A DNA stretch of 63,396 bases, the filler included, from Lenisia limosa (Eukaryota > Protista > Breviatea), in assembly GCA_001655205.1 (NCBI GenBank). It is 12 parts of 12 records of this genome, joined end to end, with 100 filler letters (N's around TTAATTAATTAA, not from the genome) between each part and the next. Parts side by side here need not be neighbours in the genome. Positions count along the whole stretch, not along the records: positions 40,714 to 50,888 come from LPNZ01003004.1; 11 more parts are not named here. One strand, written 5' to 3'. Below, piece by piece: positions 41,641-50,888 of the stretch. The translations under genes and the position numbers were made by a program. Each line of letters begins with the position of its first letter. Within the stretch, counting starts at the first letter, position 1. The notes below the pieces were generated by a model, which did no database searches, was not told where the DNA came from, and worked only from the letters and a program-made list of their open reading frames with translations.

Positions 41641-44600
41641 TTTTAAGAAACCTCTCTTGACAATTACCTTTCCAGTATTATAAAAACTATTTCAAATTAT
41701 CTTGACATCGCCTTTATGAATTACAAAACAAAAGAGAACCGAGTTTTGTTGAATCAGGGATTGAAGGGAAACATAGGCGTAAACCACTCCAAAAGTTAAT
41801 ATTTTCGAAAAAGAAATCTAGATCGAGTCTATAAATGGAATACGTTCAGTTCAGTTCAGTGATTTTTTTTTTTTTGAGTTTTTTATCCTCAGAAATGATC
41901 TTCTCTTTTTTTACAGCCATTTTTAAATAAAAATAGACAATTTTTGGGATTTATATCGCAATTATGATGAAATAAACGAGAGAAAAAAAGGTCCGATGTT
42001 TACGGCCAGGTTATGTTCACGGTCAGGTTAGTGTTCACGGTACCTTATATATTTTATACATGTATAAATTTAGTATATCATATATATATTCATAGTACTC
42101 TATGAAAATGAGCACCGCTAGTCTCTTCAGTAGGTATAGTACACATGGGGGTTATGTGGAAAGTAAACGTGTTTTCTTTACAAGTGATCACCTATTTGTA
42201 TTTGCTTTTCTTCTCACTTTCCACTGCTCACTGATTTACAGACTTTTGCCTTTTGCCTTTCAAGGAGCTCAAATAGAGGAGGTTTGGATAATGTTACGAG
42301 CATGATCATAAGGGTTGGAGTAATGTTGTAAGATATGCTACCTTTTTCTTCAAGATAATGATAATTGTTATCAATTAGTGTTCTCTGAGGAAAAAACTAA
42401 ATTCGCTGGAAAACTACTGGAAAAACTCACTGTCGGGAAAAGTAACATATTTGGAAAACTCACTGGTGATGTCATGACACAATTCGAACAGTAATATTCA
42501 AATATTCAATAATACACAATGAAAGAACAGAAACAAATAACACAAAACATCTGCACAACATCACCCAGGAATTAGACAACAAGGGGGATTGAAGGCCATT
42601 GGTAGGCAGCAGGAGCAGGAGCTAAATGTACATGAATATGGATTTGGTGCCGCTCCCCGCTCCCGCTCCTCTTCCTGTCGCTGCTCCTGTTGTCCCTTCA
42701 GCTCCTCCTGTTGCAACTACAGCTAACGGCCAAGCAGATTACTCATTTCCTTGTTCTCTGAGTCATCAAGTGAGTCGTAGGTCGTGAGGCTTCTCTTATT
42801 CTGATGACCAGTGCATATGTAACTAATGTATAAGACTATATCATATACAATTTTTTATTTTTCACTCCTTTATTCAAATCTCAACACTTGTTAAGTGATT
42901 CAAGGATGCTTAAATGCTATTTAGTAGAAAATCCTTGTTCAAGGAGTTTTGAAAGAGTGATCACTCTGAAGGCGAAAGTTGTTTTGCTGCTGACCTTCTA
43001 GTTGACTTTATTAGGTTCTTGTATTGATAAAATGAAGAATTGGCAAGCTAACCTACTGAAAGTTGTGTTGCCAACCCCCTCTAAAGGGCCTCTTTGTCGA
43101 TTTAATGAGAGAAGAACATGTTACAACACAACTTAAGAAGATCAGTTTTCGAAGTAAACTGCTTGAGGTTGGTTAACTAGTGTCATCGACAAAAGATGAC
43201 TCAAAGCGTCAGATTTCAAGAACTTTTTGTGATCCTTGGCTACGCTCTCTAAAGTTACAGGTTGTTTTTTGCTATCATTTGGCTCAATTGAGCTATAAAG
43301 TGTACAAATAAATCAGATTTGATGAGGAAATTAACCTTTTCAGGATCTTCCCGTAAGAGCTCTCTCAATGGCTGAACGATCTCTTTAGACCGGTCTGCTT
43401 TCTGCCTTAAGGTTATTGGTAAATGTGTCTATAATGATTAATTTTGGATTTGCTGTGTGTCTACCAAATCCATTTCTGAACTCAAATTATTACGTATTTC
43501 CAATTATTGGTTATACATACATATTCTTACCCGTATGATTAAAACTGTCATATTTGGGAGAAAAGGCAAGGGAAACGCTTATTTAGAGAAAAAATTGAAA
43601 AAGCGATTTTNNNNNNNNNNNNNNNNNNNNNNNNNNNNNNNNNNNNNNNNNNNNNNNNNNNNNNNNNNNNNNNNNNNNNNNNNNNNNNNNNNNNNNNNNN
43701 NNNNNNNNNNNNNNNNNNNNNNNNNNNNNNNNNNNNNNNNNNNNNNNNNNNNNNNNNNNNNNNNNNNNNNNNNNNNNNNNNNNNNNNNNNNNNNNNNNNN
43801 NNNAAATCCCGAATGCCATTTCTCCGAGGTTCTGCGTCGAGGGGATATGAGCTACCATATACCCGATGACATATGAGAAATGTCATATTTTGAGTGATCT
43901 CAAGAAAAAAGGTCGAAATTCGTCAAATAAAAAACATTTCTTACAACAAAATTCAGTGAAGCAGAGCCAAGAAGATGATATTTCAGTTTCGTTCCGCTAA
44001 ACTCGTGGCCTCCACTTAGGAAAGGTCTCGTTAGCTCAGCGAACGGACTTCGTCCTCGTGTTTTTCTTTTAGTTGGCCTGGTACCAACTTTAATGCTCTC
44101 TAAACAATATGAGATTTTCCTTTTAAAACTTTGTCTTTGGTAGTCGCTGTTGCGTAATTCCTCAATAAGCCTTTGTTCGACCATTAAATCGAGATTGGAA
44201 TGGTAAATTATGACGTGTCACAGTTCCTGCTCTGACCACAGCAGTTAGAATAAATGTTTAGGGGAGCTGAACTAGAGAGAGCCCTCAAAAGGCTTTTTCT
44301 CCCCCGCAAAACACTTCTAGTTTAGCTTTTAGAGATAAAAATAGAGATTAGCTGCCTCTCTGCGTTTGCGTATAAAATACGAAGTTCAAAGTGAGTTCAC
44401 AGCTTTGAGACGCCAGGAACTTGCCAAGAACAGAGCAGCAGATCTTGCTTTGAATAAATGTTGAGTTTGGATTCTAGAGGATTTAGTTCTCTTTTAATGC
44501 GATGTCTCTTAAGTTTAACCCAATTTACTTAACAAACCTTCTTTTAAAACAAGATCTTGCTCCAAAAAACGCAAGTTCTTCAATTCAAGGCAGTAAGAGG

Positions 44601-44811
44601 ACCCAATGAGGAAAACCATCTCAACTTTTGAAAGCAGAAAAAGGAAGAAAAAAAACAACTTTTAATACAGTATCACCTTAAATTAGTTACATGTAGAATC
44701 CTAAGTAGGAACAAAACCTGACTTCACCTTTTAGAAAGAACAGAAAAGAAACACTATAACATAATTACGCATTAATTGAACAAAATGCTTCACTTTTTTA
44801 AGGTCGCCTAC

Positions 44812-45651
44812 TATAGAAAGAACTTCGGAGAGTCAAAGCCATTCTTCTTGGCGTGGGCGGAGATGTAGTTCATGTGAGGAACGCGCTTGATGTACTGTAA
44901 GTACCAACGAACGAAGCAACGGTCAGAATTGGAAGCAGTAAGGGCGGTGATGACGACGGCAGCTCGAGGCTTCTTGACGACAGTCTTCCTGCCGCTGCTG
45001 GTAGTTGTCACAGTCAAACCTGAAGACAATTAAAAAAACAAAGAAACAAATTTTACATAGCATTCTTGTGGTTCTTGTGGATATTGTATTGCTTTACCTT
45101 TCGGGGAAGAATTGGCAGCTTCGACCATTTGAGAATTGTTTGATTGTTTTCGTCAGATGACAGACCATCGCGAGCATTTGAGTCAGCCTTCGCTCCCCAA
45201 AAGTTTTTTGAGTTCTTCAGTGCCTCATTAAAAGAGCGTTGAAAGAGGCAGTTAGCTAAAGGGTTGAAGACAAGCTTCGCACAGGGGGTATCGTAATCAG
45301 AGGGAGTGGCAAACACATACTGAACTGCCTCAACAACCTGAAAAAGTTGAAGGAAAAGTTTCACAAAATTAAATGCACTTGCCAAGTTTGCCAACCTTAG
45401 TTAGAGAATCGGGACGGTAATGGTTAGTACCATTCTGTTGGCGAATATTGAGCACAAAGAGAGAGAGGTTCTCAATTACAGTATCAGAGGATGGATGAAA
45501 AAAGTTGACCTTAGATCCACAGTACTCGATGAAACGGTGAAAGAACCAAACGTGTGAACGCTTGGTTGAGAGTTGGAATAGAGTCAGAGAAAGACATTGT
45601 TGAGAAGTAGCTTACCACCAGAGAAAGCTTGGCGTCTTGAAGGGAGTACAT
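44812..45651 (-). mobile_element. Crypton-type (DUF3504-like) tyrosine recombinase, N-terminal and middle exons
   Basis: ATG 45651; exons 45616-45651, 45396-45560, ~45057-45337 and 44812-~45000 read ..NLSLFVLNIRQQNGTNHYRPDSLTK (cf. L..F...RK.DG..Y.P.SL), ..DGLSSDENNQTILKW, YNIHKNHKN and NSDRCFVRWYLQYIKRVP..SPKFFL (cf. RCPV..Y...P..FYL). The segment holding the first catalytic Arg appears deleted. Confidence 0.68.
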
Positions 45652-45888
45652 TGTTATATAGCTTGTAAGTACCAATTGAATGCTTATAAAATACGATAAA
45701 AAGGTTTAAAAACAGCACTATATTTGACAGATCTGACAGAGATTTTGATCTCAAAATGTTCTCCATCCAATCCAGTCAGTTCCAGAGATCAACAGATCTT
45801 CTTTTGTTTGAGAAAAAACAAGATCATCCCCAAAAACTTATGAGACTGAATACGCTTCAATATTGAATAGATAAATACAGCAACGTAG

Positions 45889-46200
45889 TTTTCCTGGCGA
45901 ATTCAGTTATTTCCAAGCGAATTCCCACTTGGACTTGCCCGATTGGTCTTCTTCTGCTTCGCTAACTGGACCTTTCCGTTGCTACGGCCACAAGTTTGCT
46001 CAAGCCGATGCCTCAATGGCCAATTCGCACCGCGATTTACCCCAACATGTCGGCCAGAATTACTTAAACACTTTTCTCGGTGGCAGCAACAACGTTCTCG
46101 TTACTACCGGCTCCAAAAAGAAGCTTGGCACACATAGTGTCAGGAAGACGTCAACATCCGCACTTCTGTCAAGAAAGAATCCTACCAAAACTATGAAGCT
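45889..46200 (+). mobile_element. Crypton-type tyrosine recombinase, C-terminal catalytic exon
   Basis: ..QHVGQNYLNTFL..KKLGTHSVRKTSTSALL.. contains the P/HxGxNxL and HSxRxT (catalytic H-x-x-R) motifs. Bounded by CGTAG| and |GTAGGC. A candidate Tyr-nucleophile exon (AAGGLCSLDSLTFGAYER) starts at 46655, beyond a gap. Confidence 0.72.
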
Positions 46201-47579
46201 GTAGGCGCCCTTTTAAAGATCTTTAAATAATGCGTCAAAATCTCTCTAGAATATAAAGATGCTTGTTTGGTAAATAACACTAAATTTACGGTAAATGGTT
46301 GCTCTTTGCAGATCAGTTTAGTTGGTGAAACCTTAACACCATAGAACATCTTCTTGGCNNNNNNNNNNNNNNNNNNNNNNNNNNNNNNNNNNNNNNNNNN
46401 NNNNNNNNNNNNNNNNNNNNNNNNNNNNNNNNNNNNNNNNNNNNNNNNNNNNNNNNNNNNNNNNNNNNNNNNNNNNNNNNNNNNNNNNNNNNNNNNNNNN
46501 NNNNNNNNNNNNNNNNNNNNNNNNNNNNNNNNNNNNNNGAGATGAAGAAACAGTCCTCAAAAAAGATTTAACTGTTTTCCTTGACACCATTGCTCAAAAT
46601 ACATACTATAATATGCCCTAGTATGTGAGTGTGTTTTATTTCTAAATAAACTAGGCGGCAGGGGGATTGTGTTCACTGGACTCACTGACCTTCGGGGCTT
46701 ATGAGAGAATGATTAACCGCCGTCATATTGGGCAACGTCAGAGCACCTTACAAGAGGAGTGCTGTTTTTGGAAATATGATATTTTTTTGTGATTTGTACC
46801 CCAACTCTACTTATCTGATGGGGGGGGGGGAAAAGAGGTTTTTAGATCCCATACAACCAAATTCTCGAATTTTTCATATTTGGTAATGTCAGTCAAAATA
46901 GGCTTTATCTCCAGCCTATCATTTTGAAATTCGATTCGACCATTTTAAGGGATCTGGGAGTCGGGCTTTCAGTATTTGACGTCATTATAAGTTGTAAATG
47001 GCTCTAAGATAACAAAAAGTTAGACTTTCAAAAACCTCTTTTTCCGTGTATGAGAGTATCATTGCGACTTTTCGGTCAATTGTCATCCGAGTGGATTGGA
47101 GGTATCACATCTTTTGAAAATGATGGTTATTCGTGTGCTATCAAAAAGCAGTACTTCATATAAAATTACCCAAAATATCTCCTTATTCCATCTTTTTATA
47201 ATGTGATATTTTGTTTTGTTTCGCGCATCCAATACATTAGTTTTGTTTTCTGCAATGGGCTTATTTAGTTTAGGCTATGTGGCAGGAGGATTTGTCACGG
47301 AAAGAAATTTATGAATCCATTACAGAATTCTCAAGCTTACTTGTTAGATTTTATTCATAGATATTCATTTGTGATTGACTAACTTTTTGACTCATATTGG
47401 ATTTCACATGACCTTCTATTTGAAATATGATATCGTATAGGTGGGGGTGGAAAACCGCGACAGTAAAAATTTACTCTAGCGAAATACACATATCTATGAT
47501 CTAAAGCTACTACTTGATAAATAAAAGACCAGGAAAAACAATTTAAGATAGTATCTGGTAATAACTCGAGTGTGTAACT

Positions 47580-48490: not shown

Positions 48491-48547
48491 TGGTGTCATC
48501 AATCGCTTAACACTGATTAAAACAGTGTTAAGCGATTGATGACACCA
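48491..48547. repeat. Perfect hairpin: 25-bp arms, 7-nt loop
   Basis: TGGTGTCATCAATCGCTTAACACTG-ATTAAAA-CAGTGTTAAGCGATTGATGACACCA. Confidence 0.95.
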
Positions 48548-48996: not shown

Positions 48997-49177
48997 AAAT
49001 GGGGCAAACAGCAGCGCGCCGATTTTGAAATTAATCCCGTATTTTCAGTTCAAATCAGGTTCAAATTGAACAATTGTCTTTCATACTTGTACACCGCAAA
49101 ATTTAAGATGAAAACCATGAAATATCTTTCATGGTTTTCACCTTAAATTTTGCGGCGCGCTGCTGTTTGACCCATTT
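48997..49177. mobile_element. 181-bp foldback/MITE-like element with a nested hairpin
   Basis: Outer 25-bp IR AAATGGGGCAAACAGCAGCGCGCCG / CGGCGCGCTGCTGTTTGACCCATTT (1 mismatch). Inner 29-bp arms at 49094-49155 (1 mismatch, loop TATC). Confidence 0.8.
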
Positions 49178-49289
49178 AGAAGGAAATGAGGTAGTTGACA
49201 CAGAAACGTAGCCAAGCGGGGTGATATTATATTATGTAATAAAAGAATGTATGATTAGCTAAACTCCAAGAGCAGACAAGAACTCCATT

Positions 49290-49432
49290 CAGCAAAACAC
49301 AAGGAAACATCCAGGGAATTCAGAAAACACAGAAACATCCGGGGATTTCGGCAAAACACAAGGAAGCATCCAGGGAATTCAGCAAACACAAGGAAACATC
49401 CAGGGATTTTGGCAAAACACAAGGAAACATCG
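49290..49432. repeat. Minisatellite, ~32-bp unit x4-5
   Basis: Repeated CAAAACACAAGGAAACATCCAGGGAATTC(A/G)G variants. Confidence 0.85.
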
Positions 49433-50888
49433 AGGCTCAGATCGATGATATACTATCATATATCATATCCCCGTCCACAAAAACCGGTGNNNNNNNNNNN
49501 NNNNNNNNNNNNNNNNNNNNNNNNNNNNNNNNNNNNNNNNNNNNNNNNNNNNNNNNNNNNNNNNNNNNNNNNNNNNNNNNNNNNNNNNNNNNNNNNNNNN
49601 NNNNNNNNNNNNNNNNNNNNNNNNNNNNNNNNNNNNTAACATTCAGAAGAAAAATTCTTCACAATTTATGGCATTAATACATAACAGAGTTTTTGTATCA
49701 GTGATAAGCGGTTTTTAATATGTCACCGGTGCTTTTCCTACCAAAAGGAGACACAAAAAACAAGGGGAAGGGGGGGACTCACACCACATACCTGACGTCC
49801 TTAAGGTAGTCTGTCCCCTCTATCTCGTTGACAAAACAGGGTGCAGTGAGCTTGTCTTCTTTGCCACTTAAAAGCCGCTACCTCTCGTTCTGAATTTGTA
49901 CGAGAACAACAAAGCATCCAGATGATCTTCAAAGAAAGCAGTACTGAACATCTCCCGCTCCACCCCCAATTAATATGGGATCGACAAGTTTCTCATTGAT
50001 CGAATTCTAAAAGAGCTGAGAGTGAGAAAGGAAGACCAGCTAACCATAACCATGACAGTACTGATCTTCAAAGGGGAAACCTCAAATGCGGTAAATACCA
50101 CGGTCATCATTACAATTAGCCTCTAACCTGTTACAAAGGCCATCTGCAGCCCATCAGAGCTGCTTGAAATGGCAGGCCAGGCAGAAATGATCCATGACAG
50201 AATAATTCTGTCTAATTTTCGCTTTAATGCCAATACTTTCACTAAGGATCTTCATACCACCCTGTCCAACGATCTGCAACCTTGATTTTCCTTAACCGAA
50301 CAACGACTCAAATTGACTGAGACCCATCGTTACGACAGAACGAATTACTGCGTCATTCCACGGTATGCACTTGATAGTCTTTGAATATTTGACTTTATTT
50401 CTTTGTTTAGGCCAACAGCCCTTAAAAATGCCTTGGGCCACCGCCAGGTAGATCTAGAGGGGGATAAGTTTTTTTTACAAATTGAGATGCAACATTGAAA
50501 AGTGTTATATTCTTGATCAAAACATTAGTTTTGATGATTTTATATTAATTTTATCGGAAACAGAAGAAAGAAAAGTGGAATGGCCTCCAAAATAGCGACC
50601 AGAATATTTGAGGGGGTGATTATCGATCACTGAACCAAAAAAAAAATTCAAAAAAGTGTTCTTTACACTCTAGTTTATTCCTAAATCATAGCTACTTGAA
50701 ATATTACAGTGAAGTAGCAAGATAGAAGCCCTTTAAAAGAAGTCACGTTTTTTCTTCCCCCACTTCCATCCTCTAATTCCTGTTTAAGTGTTCCCCACTC
50801 CCCTTCTTAGGGCATTTCAAAGAGTAGTCTTTGTGAAGAAGTCTAAATGCCCCGAACCAAGGCCAAAGACTTTTTCCCTGTGGAAAAG

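What the first reader, a model, noticed from the sequence alone, without database searches (positions are those of the whole stretch)
44812..46790. Crypton-type tyrosine recombinase split into head-to-head halves that would splice in frame
Seen: the minus strand 45651->44812 encodes the N-terminal and middle YR motifs, ending ..SPKFFL TA|GTAGGC. The plus strand 45889->46200 encodes the next YR block (HVGQNYL, HSVRKT). Joining that phase-2 donor to the CGTAG|T acceptor at 45889 gives ..FFLYFPGEF.. in frame, like the Crypton FYLxP motif. The halves diverge from a ~240-bp spacer with no N gap between them. Established: Cryptons are eukaryotic DNA transposons with intron-containing YR genes, and YRs catalyse inversions. 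Inference, four options: (a) a dead Crypton scrambled by an inversion (supported by the apparently deleted first-Arg segment); (b) an invertible on/off switch inside the recombinase gene; (c) a split gene joined by trans-splicing from a bidirectional promoter; (d) misassembly.
Basis: partly seen in the sequence, partly recalled or inferred. Interest (0 to 1): 0.8.

Follow-up and report, generated by a model that had tools for sequence, protein, structure and literature searches.

The report
Decayed Crypton-like recombinase transposon remnant
The two head-to-head coding blocks are the ends of one small, silent, broken remnant of a tyrosine-recombinase (Crypton-like) transposon lying among other repeats inside a long intron, and nothing indicates a working invertible or trans-spliced gene.

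Summary
Only exon 2 of the minus-strand block has tool support as recombinase-like. It gives a sub-threshold Pfam QRICH1-domain hit, and its protein-language neighbours are integrase N-terminal SAM-like domains. Exon 4 and the plus-strand block match nothing in any search. The gene is broken: the best exon 3/exon 4 splice pair is out of frame, the first-Arg segment is missing, and no catalytic Tyr region exists nearby or in the now-readable gap. A gapless ENA contig reproduces the arrangement and bridges the N gap with 189 nt of non-coding sequence. There are no inverted repeats at the proposed breakpoints, no opposite-orientation DNA joints there, no RNA on the minus half and no chimeric RNA.

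New here: both blocks end at matching 10-bp inverted arms (44802-44811 and 46201-46210), each flanked by a TTTTAA direct repeat. This delimits a 1,409-bp unit with recombinase-type ends. The unit is nested in other repeats inside a ~5-kb intron of an expressed gene.

Verdict: a dead, internally rearranged Crypton-like remnant, of low interest.

The parts
44796..44801 (.). Left copy of the 6-bp direct repeat TTTTAA. It is the target or core sequence and lies in the last bases of repeat family M.
44802..44811 (.). Left terminal arm GGTCGCCTAC. It is the inverted partner (9/10, or 11/12 as AAGGTCGCCTAC) of 46201-46210.
   Evidence: Similarity to other copies of family M ends at 44802 (joint).
44814..45020 (-). 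Exon 4 block (GLTVTTTSSGRK..RCFVRWYLQYIKRVP..SPKFFL). By eye it resembles the Lys-hairpin to 'FYL' part of DUF3504/CryptonA proteins. No profile hit supports this.
   Evidence: GC is 0.52 with a sharp edge at about 44815.
45021..45097 (-). Interval between exons 3 and 4 (GTAAAG..TCTTCAG). This best donor/acceptor pair is out of frame (GTT TGA). The segment that should carry the first catalytic Arg is missing here.
45098..45337 (-). Exon 3 block (VVEAVQYVF..NFWGAKADSNARDGLSSDENNQTILKWSKLPILPRK). No homologue was found.
45396..45560 (-). Exon 2 block (RSHVWFFHRFIEYC..NIRQQNGTNHYRPDSLTK). It is the N-terminal SAM-like / QRICH1-type domain of a tyrosine recombinase and the only part with tool support.
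45616..45651 (-). Putative exon 1 (MYSLQDAKLSLV) with a GTAAGC donor. It is weak; a frameshift instead of an intron is equally possible.
45652..45889 (.). AT-rich spacer (GC 0.32) between the two divergent blocks. Its right part, from about 45760, belongs to a dispersed repeat.
45790..46002 (.). Repeat Ra. Summed word depth over 45758-46119 is 119-229, against about 40 for unique sequence. Other copies join positions 45985-46000 to sequence like 43988 onward.
45890..46201 (+). Block D (FPGEF..PDW..HVGQNYL..THSVRKT..TMKL, then TAG). It is a GC-rich island that matches the ORF exactly. It is a candidate box II (H-x-x-R) remnant by motif only, with no Tyr region after it.
46201..46210 (.). Right terminal arm GTAGGCGCCC. 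It holds the stop codon of block D.
46211..46216 (.). Right copy of the direct repeat TTTTAA.
43988..44802 (.). Repeat family M. Summed word depth is 300-800 and it has no long ORF. It abuts the unit on the left.
43841..43977 (.). 137-nt repeat A. Its inverted partner starts at 46347 and runs into the gap (L001 5455-5584). Identity is 72% overall and the inner 23 nt are perfect. The pair encloses the whole 2.37-kb block.
46359..46538 (.). Assembly gap. Contig L001 5467-5655 bridges it with 189 nt of non-coding sequence. Most of the inverted copy of repeat A lies in it.
42282..47273 (+). Intron of about 5 kb (GT..AG) in an expressed plus-strand host gene. It contains the whole finding.
   Evidence: RNA record 13 and its loose end; exact match of the loose end at 42250-42279.

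Best explanation
The locus holds one decayed, non-autonomous remnant of a Crypton-type (DUF3504/QRICH1-like) tyrosine-recombinase transposon, about 1.4 kb long (44802-46210).

Shown:
- The unit is delimited by 10-bp inverted arms and a 6-bp direct repeat (TTTTAA). This is the end structure expected after site-specific integration of a circle carrying a 10-6-10 site.
- It lies beside and within other dispersed repeats, inside a ~5-kb intron of an expressed host gene.
- The N-terminal SAM-like domain survives on the minus strand.
- The first-Arg segment is missing and the frame is broken between exons 3 and 4.
- No Tyr region exists.
- The locus is silent in the one RNA run and has one fixed orientation in the DNA data.

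Inferred:
- A block that may be the H-x-x-R region lies on the opposite strand.
- The head-to-head layout is an old internal DNA rearrangement (inversion or template switch), not a regulated switch or a trans-spliced gene.
For: - Exon 2 looks recombinase-like: Pfam QRICH1 domain, and Atlas neighbours dominated by integrase SAM-like domains and QRICH1.
- Exon-like GC islands have sharp edges at 44815 and at 45900-46200.
- The best exon 3/exon 4 splice pair is out of frame.
- The structure 'TTTTAA + 10-bp arm ... arm + TTTTAA' occurs once in the contig and in 7 of 300 composition-preserving shuffles.
- That structure sits exactly at the ends of both coding blocks. Its left end coincides with the point where similarity to other M copies stops (joint at 44802).
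- Cryptons are described as flanked by 4-6-bp direct repeats. Recombinase sites are described as inverted arms around a 6-8-bp spacer (PMC3212892; PMC13465315).
- 44750-45789 is one error-free contig at unique depth (~40). RNA depth is zero on 44853-45757. No opposite-strand or chimeric joints occur at 44812 or 45889.
- A second, gapless assembly is identical and colinear.
- The gap holds no exon.
- The composite motif G-x-N-x-[LIVM], 15-30 residues, H-[ST]-x-R-x-[TS] occurs once in the real piece and in 0 of 400 shuffles. The motif was defined post hoc.
Against: - No part reaches a curated family threshold.
- Exon 3, exon 4 and block D match nothing.
- Control ORFs give chance Pfam hits at similar E-values.
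- The unit is single-copy apart from 45790-46002, so mobility is inferred from its ends only.
- Animal Cryptons are reported to have no terminal repeats, and Cryptons in general no TIRs.
- The termini abut truncated coding sequence, which a simple transposon model does not predict.
- No arm-like site marks the internal breakpoint.
- The first third of D lies in a repeat whose other copies continue differently.
Confidence: 0.6

Rival explanations
1. Only the minus-strand block derives from a recombinase. The plus-strand block D is an unrelated ORF, either a piece of the dispersed repeat Ra/K or a chance open frame. On this reading there is no split gene, only a 3'-truncated Crypton fragment next to other transposon debris.
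For: - D has no hit in 1.84 billion representative proteins, Pfam, PHROGs, NCBIfam or PDB. Its Atlas recognition is 1000 and its AlphaFold pLDDT is 48.
- Its first ~37 codons lie in a multi-copy repeat whose other copies run on into M-like sequence.
- Stop-free stretches of about 100 codons occur elsewhere in the piece.
From memory the family has about 20.
Against: - D is a sharply bounded GC-rich island with the composition of exons 3 and 4, not of the host exons.
- The composite box-II-like motif is absent from 400 shuffles.
- D ends at the same terminal arm as exon 4.
Confidence: 0.22
2. The head-to-head adjacency is an assembly artefact. The path from the unique contig 44750-45789 through the ~210-nt repeat to 46003-46358 joins two different loci.
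For: - Logan contigs of the holder run break at 45789 and 46003.
- The stretch between has several variant copies.
- The scaffold is a short-read draft with gaps at repeats.
Against: - An independently built gapless contig (ENA ERZ3820729 NODE_1550, 10,761 nt) has the same order at 100% identity.
- 97-99% of sampled 31-mers are present in the holder run.
- Depth is even, at 30-55, over the unique parts.
- The matching arm + TTTTAA ends on both sides argue for one physical unit.
Confidence: 0.07
3. The arrangement is functional. It is either a DNA switch that flips part of the recombinase gene on and off, or two divergent transcripts from a bidirectional promoter that are trans-spliced into one recombinase mRNA.
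For: - The proposed junction is in frame.
- The blocks diverge from a 238-bp AT-rich spacer.
- Opposite-strand trans-splicing is known in Drosophila mod(mdg4) (from my own knowledge).
Against: - No inverted sites flank either half.
- There is no second orientation and no chimeric joint in DNA or RNA contigs, and no RNA at all on the minus half.
- The frame is broken between exons 3 and 4 and the first Arg is missing.
- No Tyr region lies in the unit, in the gap or in the 0.7 kb translated downstream of block D.
- The acceptor is poor and lies in a dispersed repeat.
Confidence: 0.02

Closest known systems
Crypton DNA transposons, CryptonA / DUF3504-encoding lineage (Kojima & Jurka 2011, PMC3212892; Glomhopper, PMC13465315)
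   Same: - An N-terminal SAM-like/QRICH1-type domain (weak hit).
- An intron-containing recombinase gene.
- Short 6-bp terminal direct repeats, as in fungal and oomycete Cryptons.
- Truncated, 'intronized' copies in repeat-rich regions are reported as the common state.
   Different: - No profile-level match to the catalytic domain, and the R-H-R-Y tetrad is not present.
- Only 1.4 kb long and single-copy.
- 10-bp inverted arms at the ends, whereas Cryptons are described as lacking TIRs.
- The coding sequence lies in two opposed blocks that abut the termini.
Domesticated DUF3504 genes (KIAA1958, ZMYM2-4, QRICH1, WOC)
   Same: The Pfam hit is to the QRICH1 domain. These genes also lack the catalytic tetrad.
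   Different: Those genes are conserved, expressed and intact. This locus is silent, frame-broken, lies inside another gene's intron and has transposon-like ends.
Prophage-type attL/attR architecture of tyrosine-recombinase integration (core overlap as a direct repeat, core-type arms as inverted repeats)
   Same: The ends read TTTTAA + GGTCGCCTAC ... GTAGGCGCCC + TTTTAA. Joined in a circle they would give a 10-6-10 site.
   Different: No active recombinase, no empty site and no circular form was observed. The similarity is structural only.
Invertible DNA switches driven by site-specific recombinases (fimS/FimB-FimE, Hin/Gin)
   Same: A recombinase-related gene lies next to short inverted repeats.
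   Different: The inverted arms flank the whole unit, not one half, so a flip would not make the halves colinear. Only one orientation is seen and the recombinase is dead.

Membership tests
Crypton (tyrosine-recombinase DNA transposon) | Encodes a tyrosine recombinase with the R-H-R-Y catalytic tetrad | tested here: not met
   - The first-Arg segment is absent between exons 3 and 4.
- H-x-x-R is present only as an unverified HSVR on the other strand.
- No Tyr block was found in the unit, in the filled gap or in the flanks that were translated (42280-43610 and 46539-47300).
Crypton (tyrosine-recombinase DNA transposon) | Profile-level similarity of the protein to YR/DUF3504 families | tested here: not met
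   There is no PF00589 or PF12012 hit for any piece. The only hit is PF25561 (QRICH1 domain) at 13.8 bits against a cutoff of 30.8. Pieces had to be searched apart, which lowers power.
Crypton (tyrosine-recombinase DNA transposon) | N-terminal SAM-like (core-binding) domain of a recombinase | tested here: inconclusive
   Pfam QRICH1 domain at E 0.064. Atlas named neighbours are 38 Phage_int_SAM_1, 23 'putative integrase' and 14 QRICH1 out of 100, with scores of 0.87-0.88. Two methods agree, but both are below their confidence lines.
Crypton (tyrosine-recombinase DNA transposon) | Short (4-6 bp) direct repeats at both termini | tested here: met
   TTTTAA at 44796-44801 and 46211-46216, next to the 10-bp arms. 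The combined structure occurs in 7 of 300 shuffles. The definition comes from PMC3212892 and PMC13465315.
Crypton (tyrosine-recombinase DNA transposon) | Repeated in the genome (mobile family) | tested here: not met
   44853-45757 has flat unique depth (~40) from a single contig. Only 45790-46002 is multi-copy. No protein relatives were found.
Invertible recombinase switch | Inverted recombination sites flanking the segment whose flip restores the gene, and both orientations present in reads | tested here: not met
   No inverted repeats lie at 44812 versus 45652-45889. There is no third arm copy. No opposite-strand joint occurs at those places.
Trans-spliced divergent gene (mod(mdg4)-type) | Transcripts from both strands and chimeric mRNA joining them | tested here: not met
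   RNA depth is 0 on 44853-45757. No joint links 44812 and 45889 in the polyA RNA run. Only one small RNA run was available.
Domesticated DUF3504 gene | Intact, expressed, conserved open reading frame | tested here: not met
   The frame is broken, there is no RNA and no homologues were found.

The most novel reading that the evidence does not exclude
The 1.4-kb unit is not debris but the native form of an undescribed compact recombinase element. Two outward-facing coding blocks each end, in the same codon phase, at a terminal arm whose GT could act as a splice donor. On this reading, expression or assembly of the recombinase would depend on the state of the 10-6-10 site (integrated, circular or flipped).
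Probability: 0.03. Interest if true: 0.75.

Novelty: new member of a known kind. Interest (0 to 1): 0.22.

Why it matters
As read by the first stage, a recombinase gene switched by its own inversion or assembled by trans-splicing would be remarkable, but the evidence does not support that reading. What remains is a very divergent, dead Crypton-like fragment. Its only notable feature is a clean pair of recombinase-type ends: 10-bp inverted arms plus a 6-bp direct repeat. Crypton boundaries are notoriously hard to define. If more copies exist in this unidentified organism, those ends could help to define the boundaries and target site of a new Crypton lineage.

Tried and rejected
- **Homologue searches.** Block D, the exon 3 ORF and exon 2 gave nothing in the word-index search. 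Block D gave nothing in the exhaustive search of 1.84 billion representatives.
- **Family and structure libraries.** PDB, PHROGs and NCBIfam gave no recombinase hits.
- **Protein Atlas.** Results for D and exon 4 were at chance level.
- **Structure prediction.** AlphaFold on D alone gave pLDDT 48, so no fold search was run.
- **Exact-sequence look-ups.** Look-ups of window ORFs mostly failed. The host-exon ORF succeeded and brought in contig L001.
- **Metagenome scan.** A JGI metagenome DNA scan for an exon 2 string found nothing.
- **Rfam.** No matches.
- **Rejected: D is an inverted duplicate of exon 4.** BLASTP E-value is 21, and the terminal similarity does not extend beyond about 12-16 nt.
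- **Rejected: a 3' continuation of the gene.** None lies left of repeat M, in either readable gap, or downstream of D.
- **Rejected: twin-priming retrocopy.** It would give the same head-to-head order, but there is no polyA tail and intron-like intervals are retained.
- **Not attempted: one spliced protein across the breaks.** The tools take pieces only, and long sequences may not be typed.
- **Not identified: the organism.** Its ORFs are ENA-only singletons.
Full report

- On the minus strand there are four open blocks: 45651-45616, 45560-45396, 45337-45098 and 45020-44814. They are separated by short GT..AG intervals of 55, 58 and 78 nt. The last block ends ..SPKFFL followed by TAG TAG.
- On the plus strand a 104-codon open block (45890-46201, here called D) reads FPGEF..HVGQNYL..THSVRKT..TMKL and then stops.
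- The proposed join (CTA TA + T TTT CCT) is arithmetically in frame. That is a one-in-three event, and the acceptor CGTAG| has no pyrimidine tract.
- The exons and D are GC-rich islands (0.42-0.52) with sharp edges against AT-rich introns and flanks (0.27-0.37). This argues that D is a real former exon and not a random ORF.

**The gap.** The N run at 46359-46538 lies downstream of every coding block.

- An exact look-up of a neighbouring ORF returned a gapless 10,761-nt ENA metagenome contig (ERZ3820729 NODE_1550, locus L001). It is 100% identical and colinear with three of the piece's four non-N stretches and 99.7% with the fourth (49637-50888), and it fills all three gaps.
- The flagged gap is 189 nt of sequence with stops in all three plus-strand frames, so it hides no recombinase exon.
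- L001 is also a second assembly that reproduces the head-to-head order, although probably from the same reads.

**Is it a tyrosine recombinase?** Only exon 2 has tool support.

- Exon 2 gives a sub-threshold Pfam hit to the QRICH1 domain, the N-terminal domain that accompanies DUF3504: E 0.064, 13.8 bits, cutoff 30.8.
- Of its 100 nearest named Atlas clusters, 38 carry Phage_int_SAM_1, 23 are 'putative integrase' and 14 carry QRICH1.
- Control ORFs from the same piece give unrelated Pfam hits at E 0.05-0.08. The E-value alone means little.
- Exon 3, exon 4 and D gave no recombinase hit in Pfam, PHROGs, NCBIfam or PDB, and the homologue searches run on D, on the exon 3 ORF and on exon 2 found nothing. 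A single-sequence AlphaFold model of D was useless (pLDDT 48).
- From my own memory of KIAA1958-like/DUF3504 proteins (a lead, not a test), three spacings fit well: exon 2 (TK..W..F..EYC .. R..nG..Y.PdSL), exon 4 (VV, ten residues, RC.VR.Y..Y...P .. FFL) and D (VG.N.L .. THS.R.T...L).
- A composite motif for the D part occurs once in the real piece and in none of 400 dinucleotide shuffles. The motif was defined after seeing the sequence.
- I put about two chances in three on D being a box II remnant of the same family.

**The gene is dead.**

- The strongest donor/acceptor pair between exons 3 and 4 (AAG|GTAAAG .. TCTTCAG|GTT) is out of frame and runs into TGA. In-frame alternatives need weak acceptors inside exon 4.
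- The roughly 60 residues that should carry the first catalytic Arg are absent between exons 3 and 4.
- D stops 19 residues after HSVR.
- No Tyr-bearing block exists in the unit, in the filled gaps or in the translated flanks.

**Reads.** One DNA-type run (X1, Logan contigs, probably the source sample) and one polyA RNA run (X2) were available.

- 44750-45789 is a single error-free contig at unique depth (~40). The minus half is therefore single-copy.
- 45790-46002 has summed depth of 119-229 over its bins, with several variant copies. No listed contig bridges it.
- In other copies, positions 45985-46000 run on into sequence like 43988 onward. One such copy lies in a 1,423-nt RNA contig.
- No opposite-strand joint occurs at 44812 or 45889.
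- RNA depth is zero on 44853-45757, and no chimeric RNA contig exists.
- The RNA run shows that the whole region lies in a ~5-kb GT..AG intron (42282-47273) of an expressed plus-strand gene.

**New structure.** Both coding blocks end at the same short sequence.

- The arm GGTCGCCTAC (44802-44811) and the arm GTAGGCGCCC (46201-46210) are inverted repeats (9/10, or 11/12 if extended). Each is flanked on the outside by TTTTAA (44796-44801 and 46211-46216).
- This '6-bp direct repeat + 10-bp inverted arm' structure occurs once in the 2.55-kb contig and in 7 of 300 composition-preserving shuffles.
- It sits at the exact ends of both GC islands.
- Its left end coincides with the point (44802) where similarity to other copies of the flanking repeat M stops.
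- The arm has no third copy.
- Joined in a circle, the ends would read 10-6-10, the classical layout of a tyrosine-recombinase site. Fungal and oomycete Cryptons are described as flanked by 4-6-bp direct repeats that reflect site-specific integration (PMC3212892, PMC13465315).
- I therefore read 44802-46210 as one discrete 1,409-bp unit. It is nested in a larger repeat bounded by 137-nt inverted repeats at 43841-43977 and from 46347 into the gap.

**What this does to the four options.**

- (a) A dead, rearranged Crypton is the best fit. A simple one-step inversion is not demonstrated. No arm-like or inverted sequence marks the internal breakpoint. A flip of the whole unit between its arms, or its circularisation, would not make the blocks colinear.
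- (b) A switch and (c) trans-splicing have no support and several counts against them.
- (d) Misassembly is reduced by the second assembly and by the matched ends, but it is not excluded.

A further rival is that D is unrelated to the recombinase.

**Novelty and interest.** This is a divergent, single-copy, dead member of a known kind of element. The clean recombinase-type ends are a modest point of interest. The unusual reading, in which outward-facing exons abut arms that start with GT in the same phase as part of a working design, cannot be excluded, but I give it about 3%.

Noticed in passing
window 42102-42281 and 47274-47357 (+): A polyA RNA contig of 1,497 nt joins ..FAFQGAQIEE (donor at 42281|GT) to AMWQEDLSRKEIYESITEFSSLLVRFYS* (acceptor AG|47274). 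This is an expressed host gene with a ~5-kb intron full of repeats. Neither exon has a Pfam match.
   Followed up: partly
window 43841-43977 and 46347 into the gap (L001 2949-3085 and 5455-5584): A pair of 137-nt inverted repeats encloses 2.37 kb. Identity is 72% overall, the inner 23 nt are perfect and the outer 26 nt match 24/26. The repeat is multi-copy (summed depth of about 580), probably a MITE-like family. All three scaffold gaps fall in similar 'ATATGGCATTTC'-type repeats.
   Followed up: partly
window 43988-44802: Repeat family M is 815 bp, has summed depth of 300-800 and no long ORF. It is found next to different neighbours in other loci (Ra-like sequence on its left, inverted A on its right) and is present in polyA RNA contigs.
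   Followed up: partly
window 46198-46355: A 158-nt RNA contig matches exactly. It starts 3 nt before the right arm of the unit and ends in the inverted A repeat. It may be intronic RNA of the host gene.
   Followed up: no
window 48491-48547, 49094-49155 and 48997-49177: There are two near-perfect palindromes of 57 and 62 nt. The second is nested inside a further 25-nt inverted repeat pair, giving a ~180-nt foldback structure.
   Followed up: no
window 49265-49435: A tandem array of units of about 30 nt (AACACAAGGAAACATCCAGGGA-like), next to the third scaffold gap.
   Followed up: no
L001 10082-10675 (window from about 50844 on): A 197-aa ORF (MPRTKAKDFFPVEKEF..) looks like real coding sequence. 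It has no Pfam match. One ≥90%-identical relative lies on another contig of the same ENA assembly (P0002).
   Followed up: partly
window 45885-45914 versus 42389-42417: A 30-nt inverted match (87%, E 5e-4) links the start of block D to sequence just inside the host intron's 5' end. It is unexplained.
   Followed up: no
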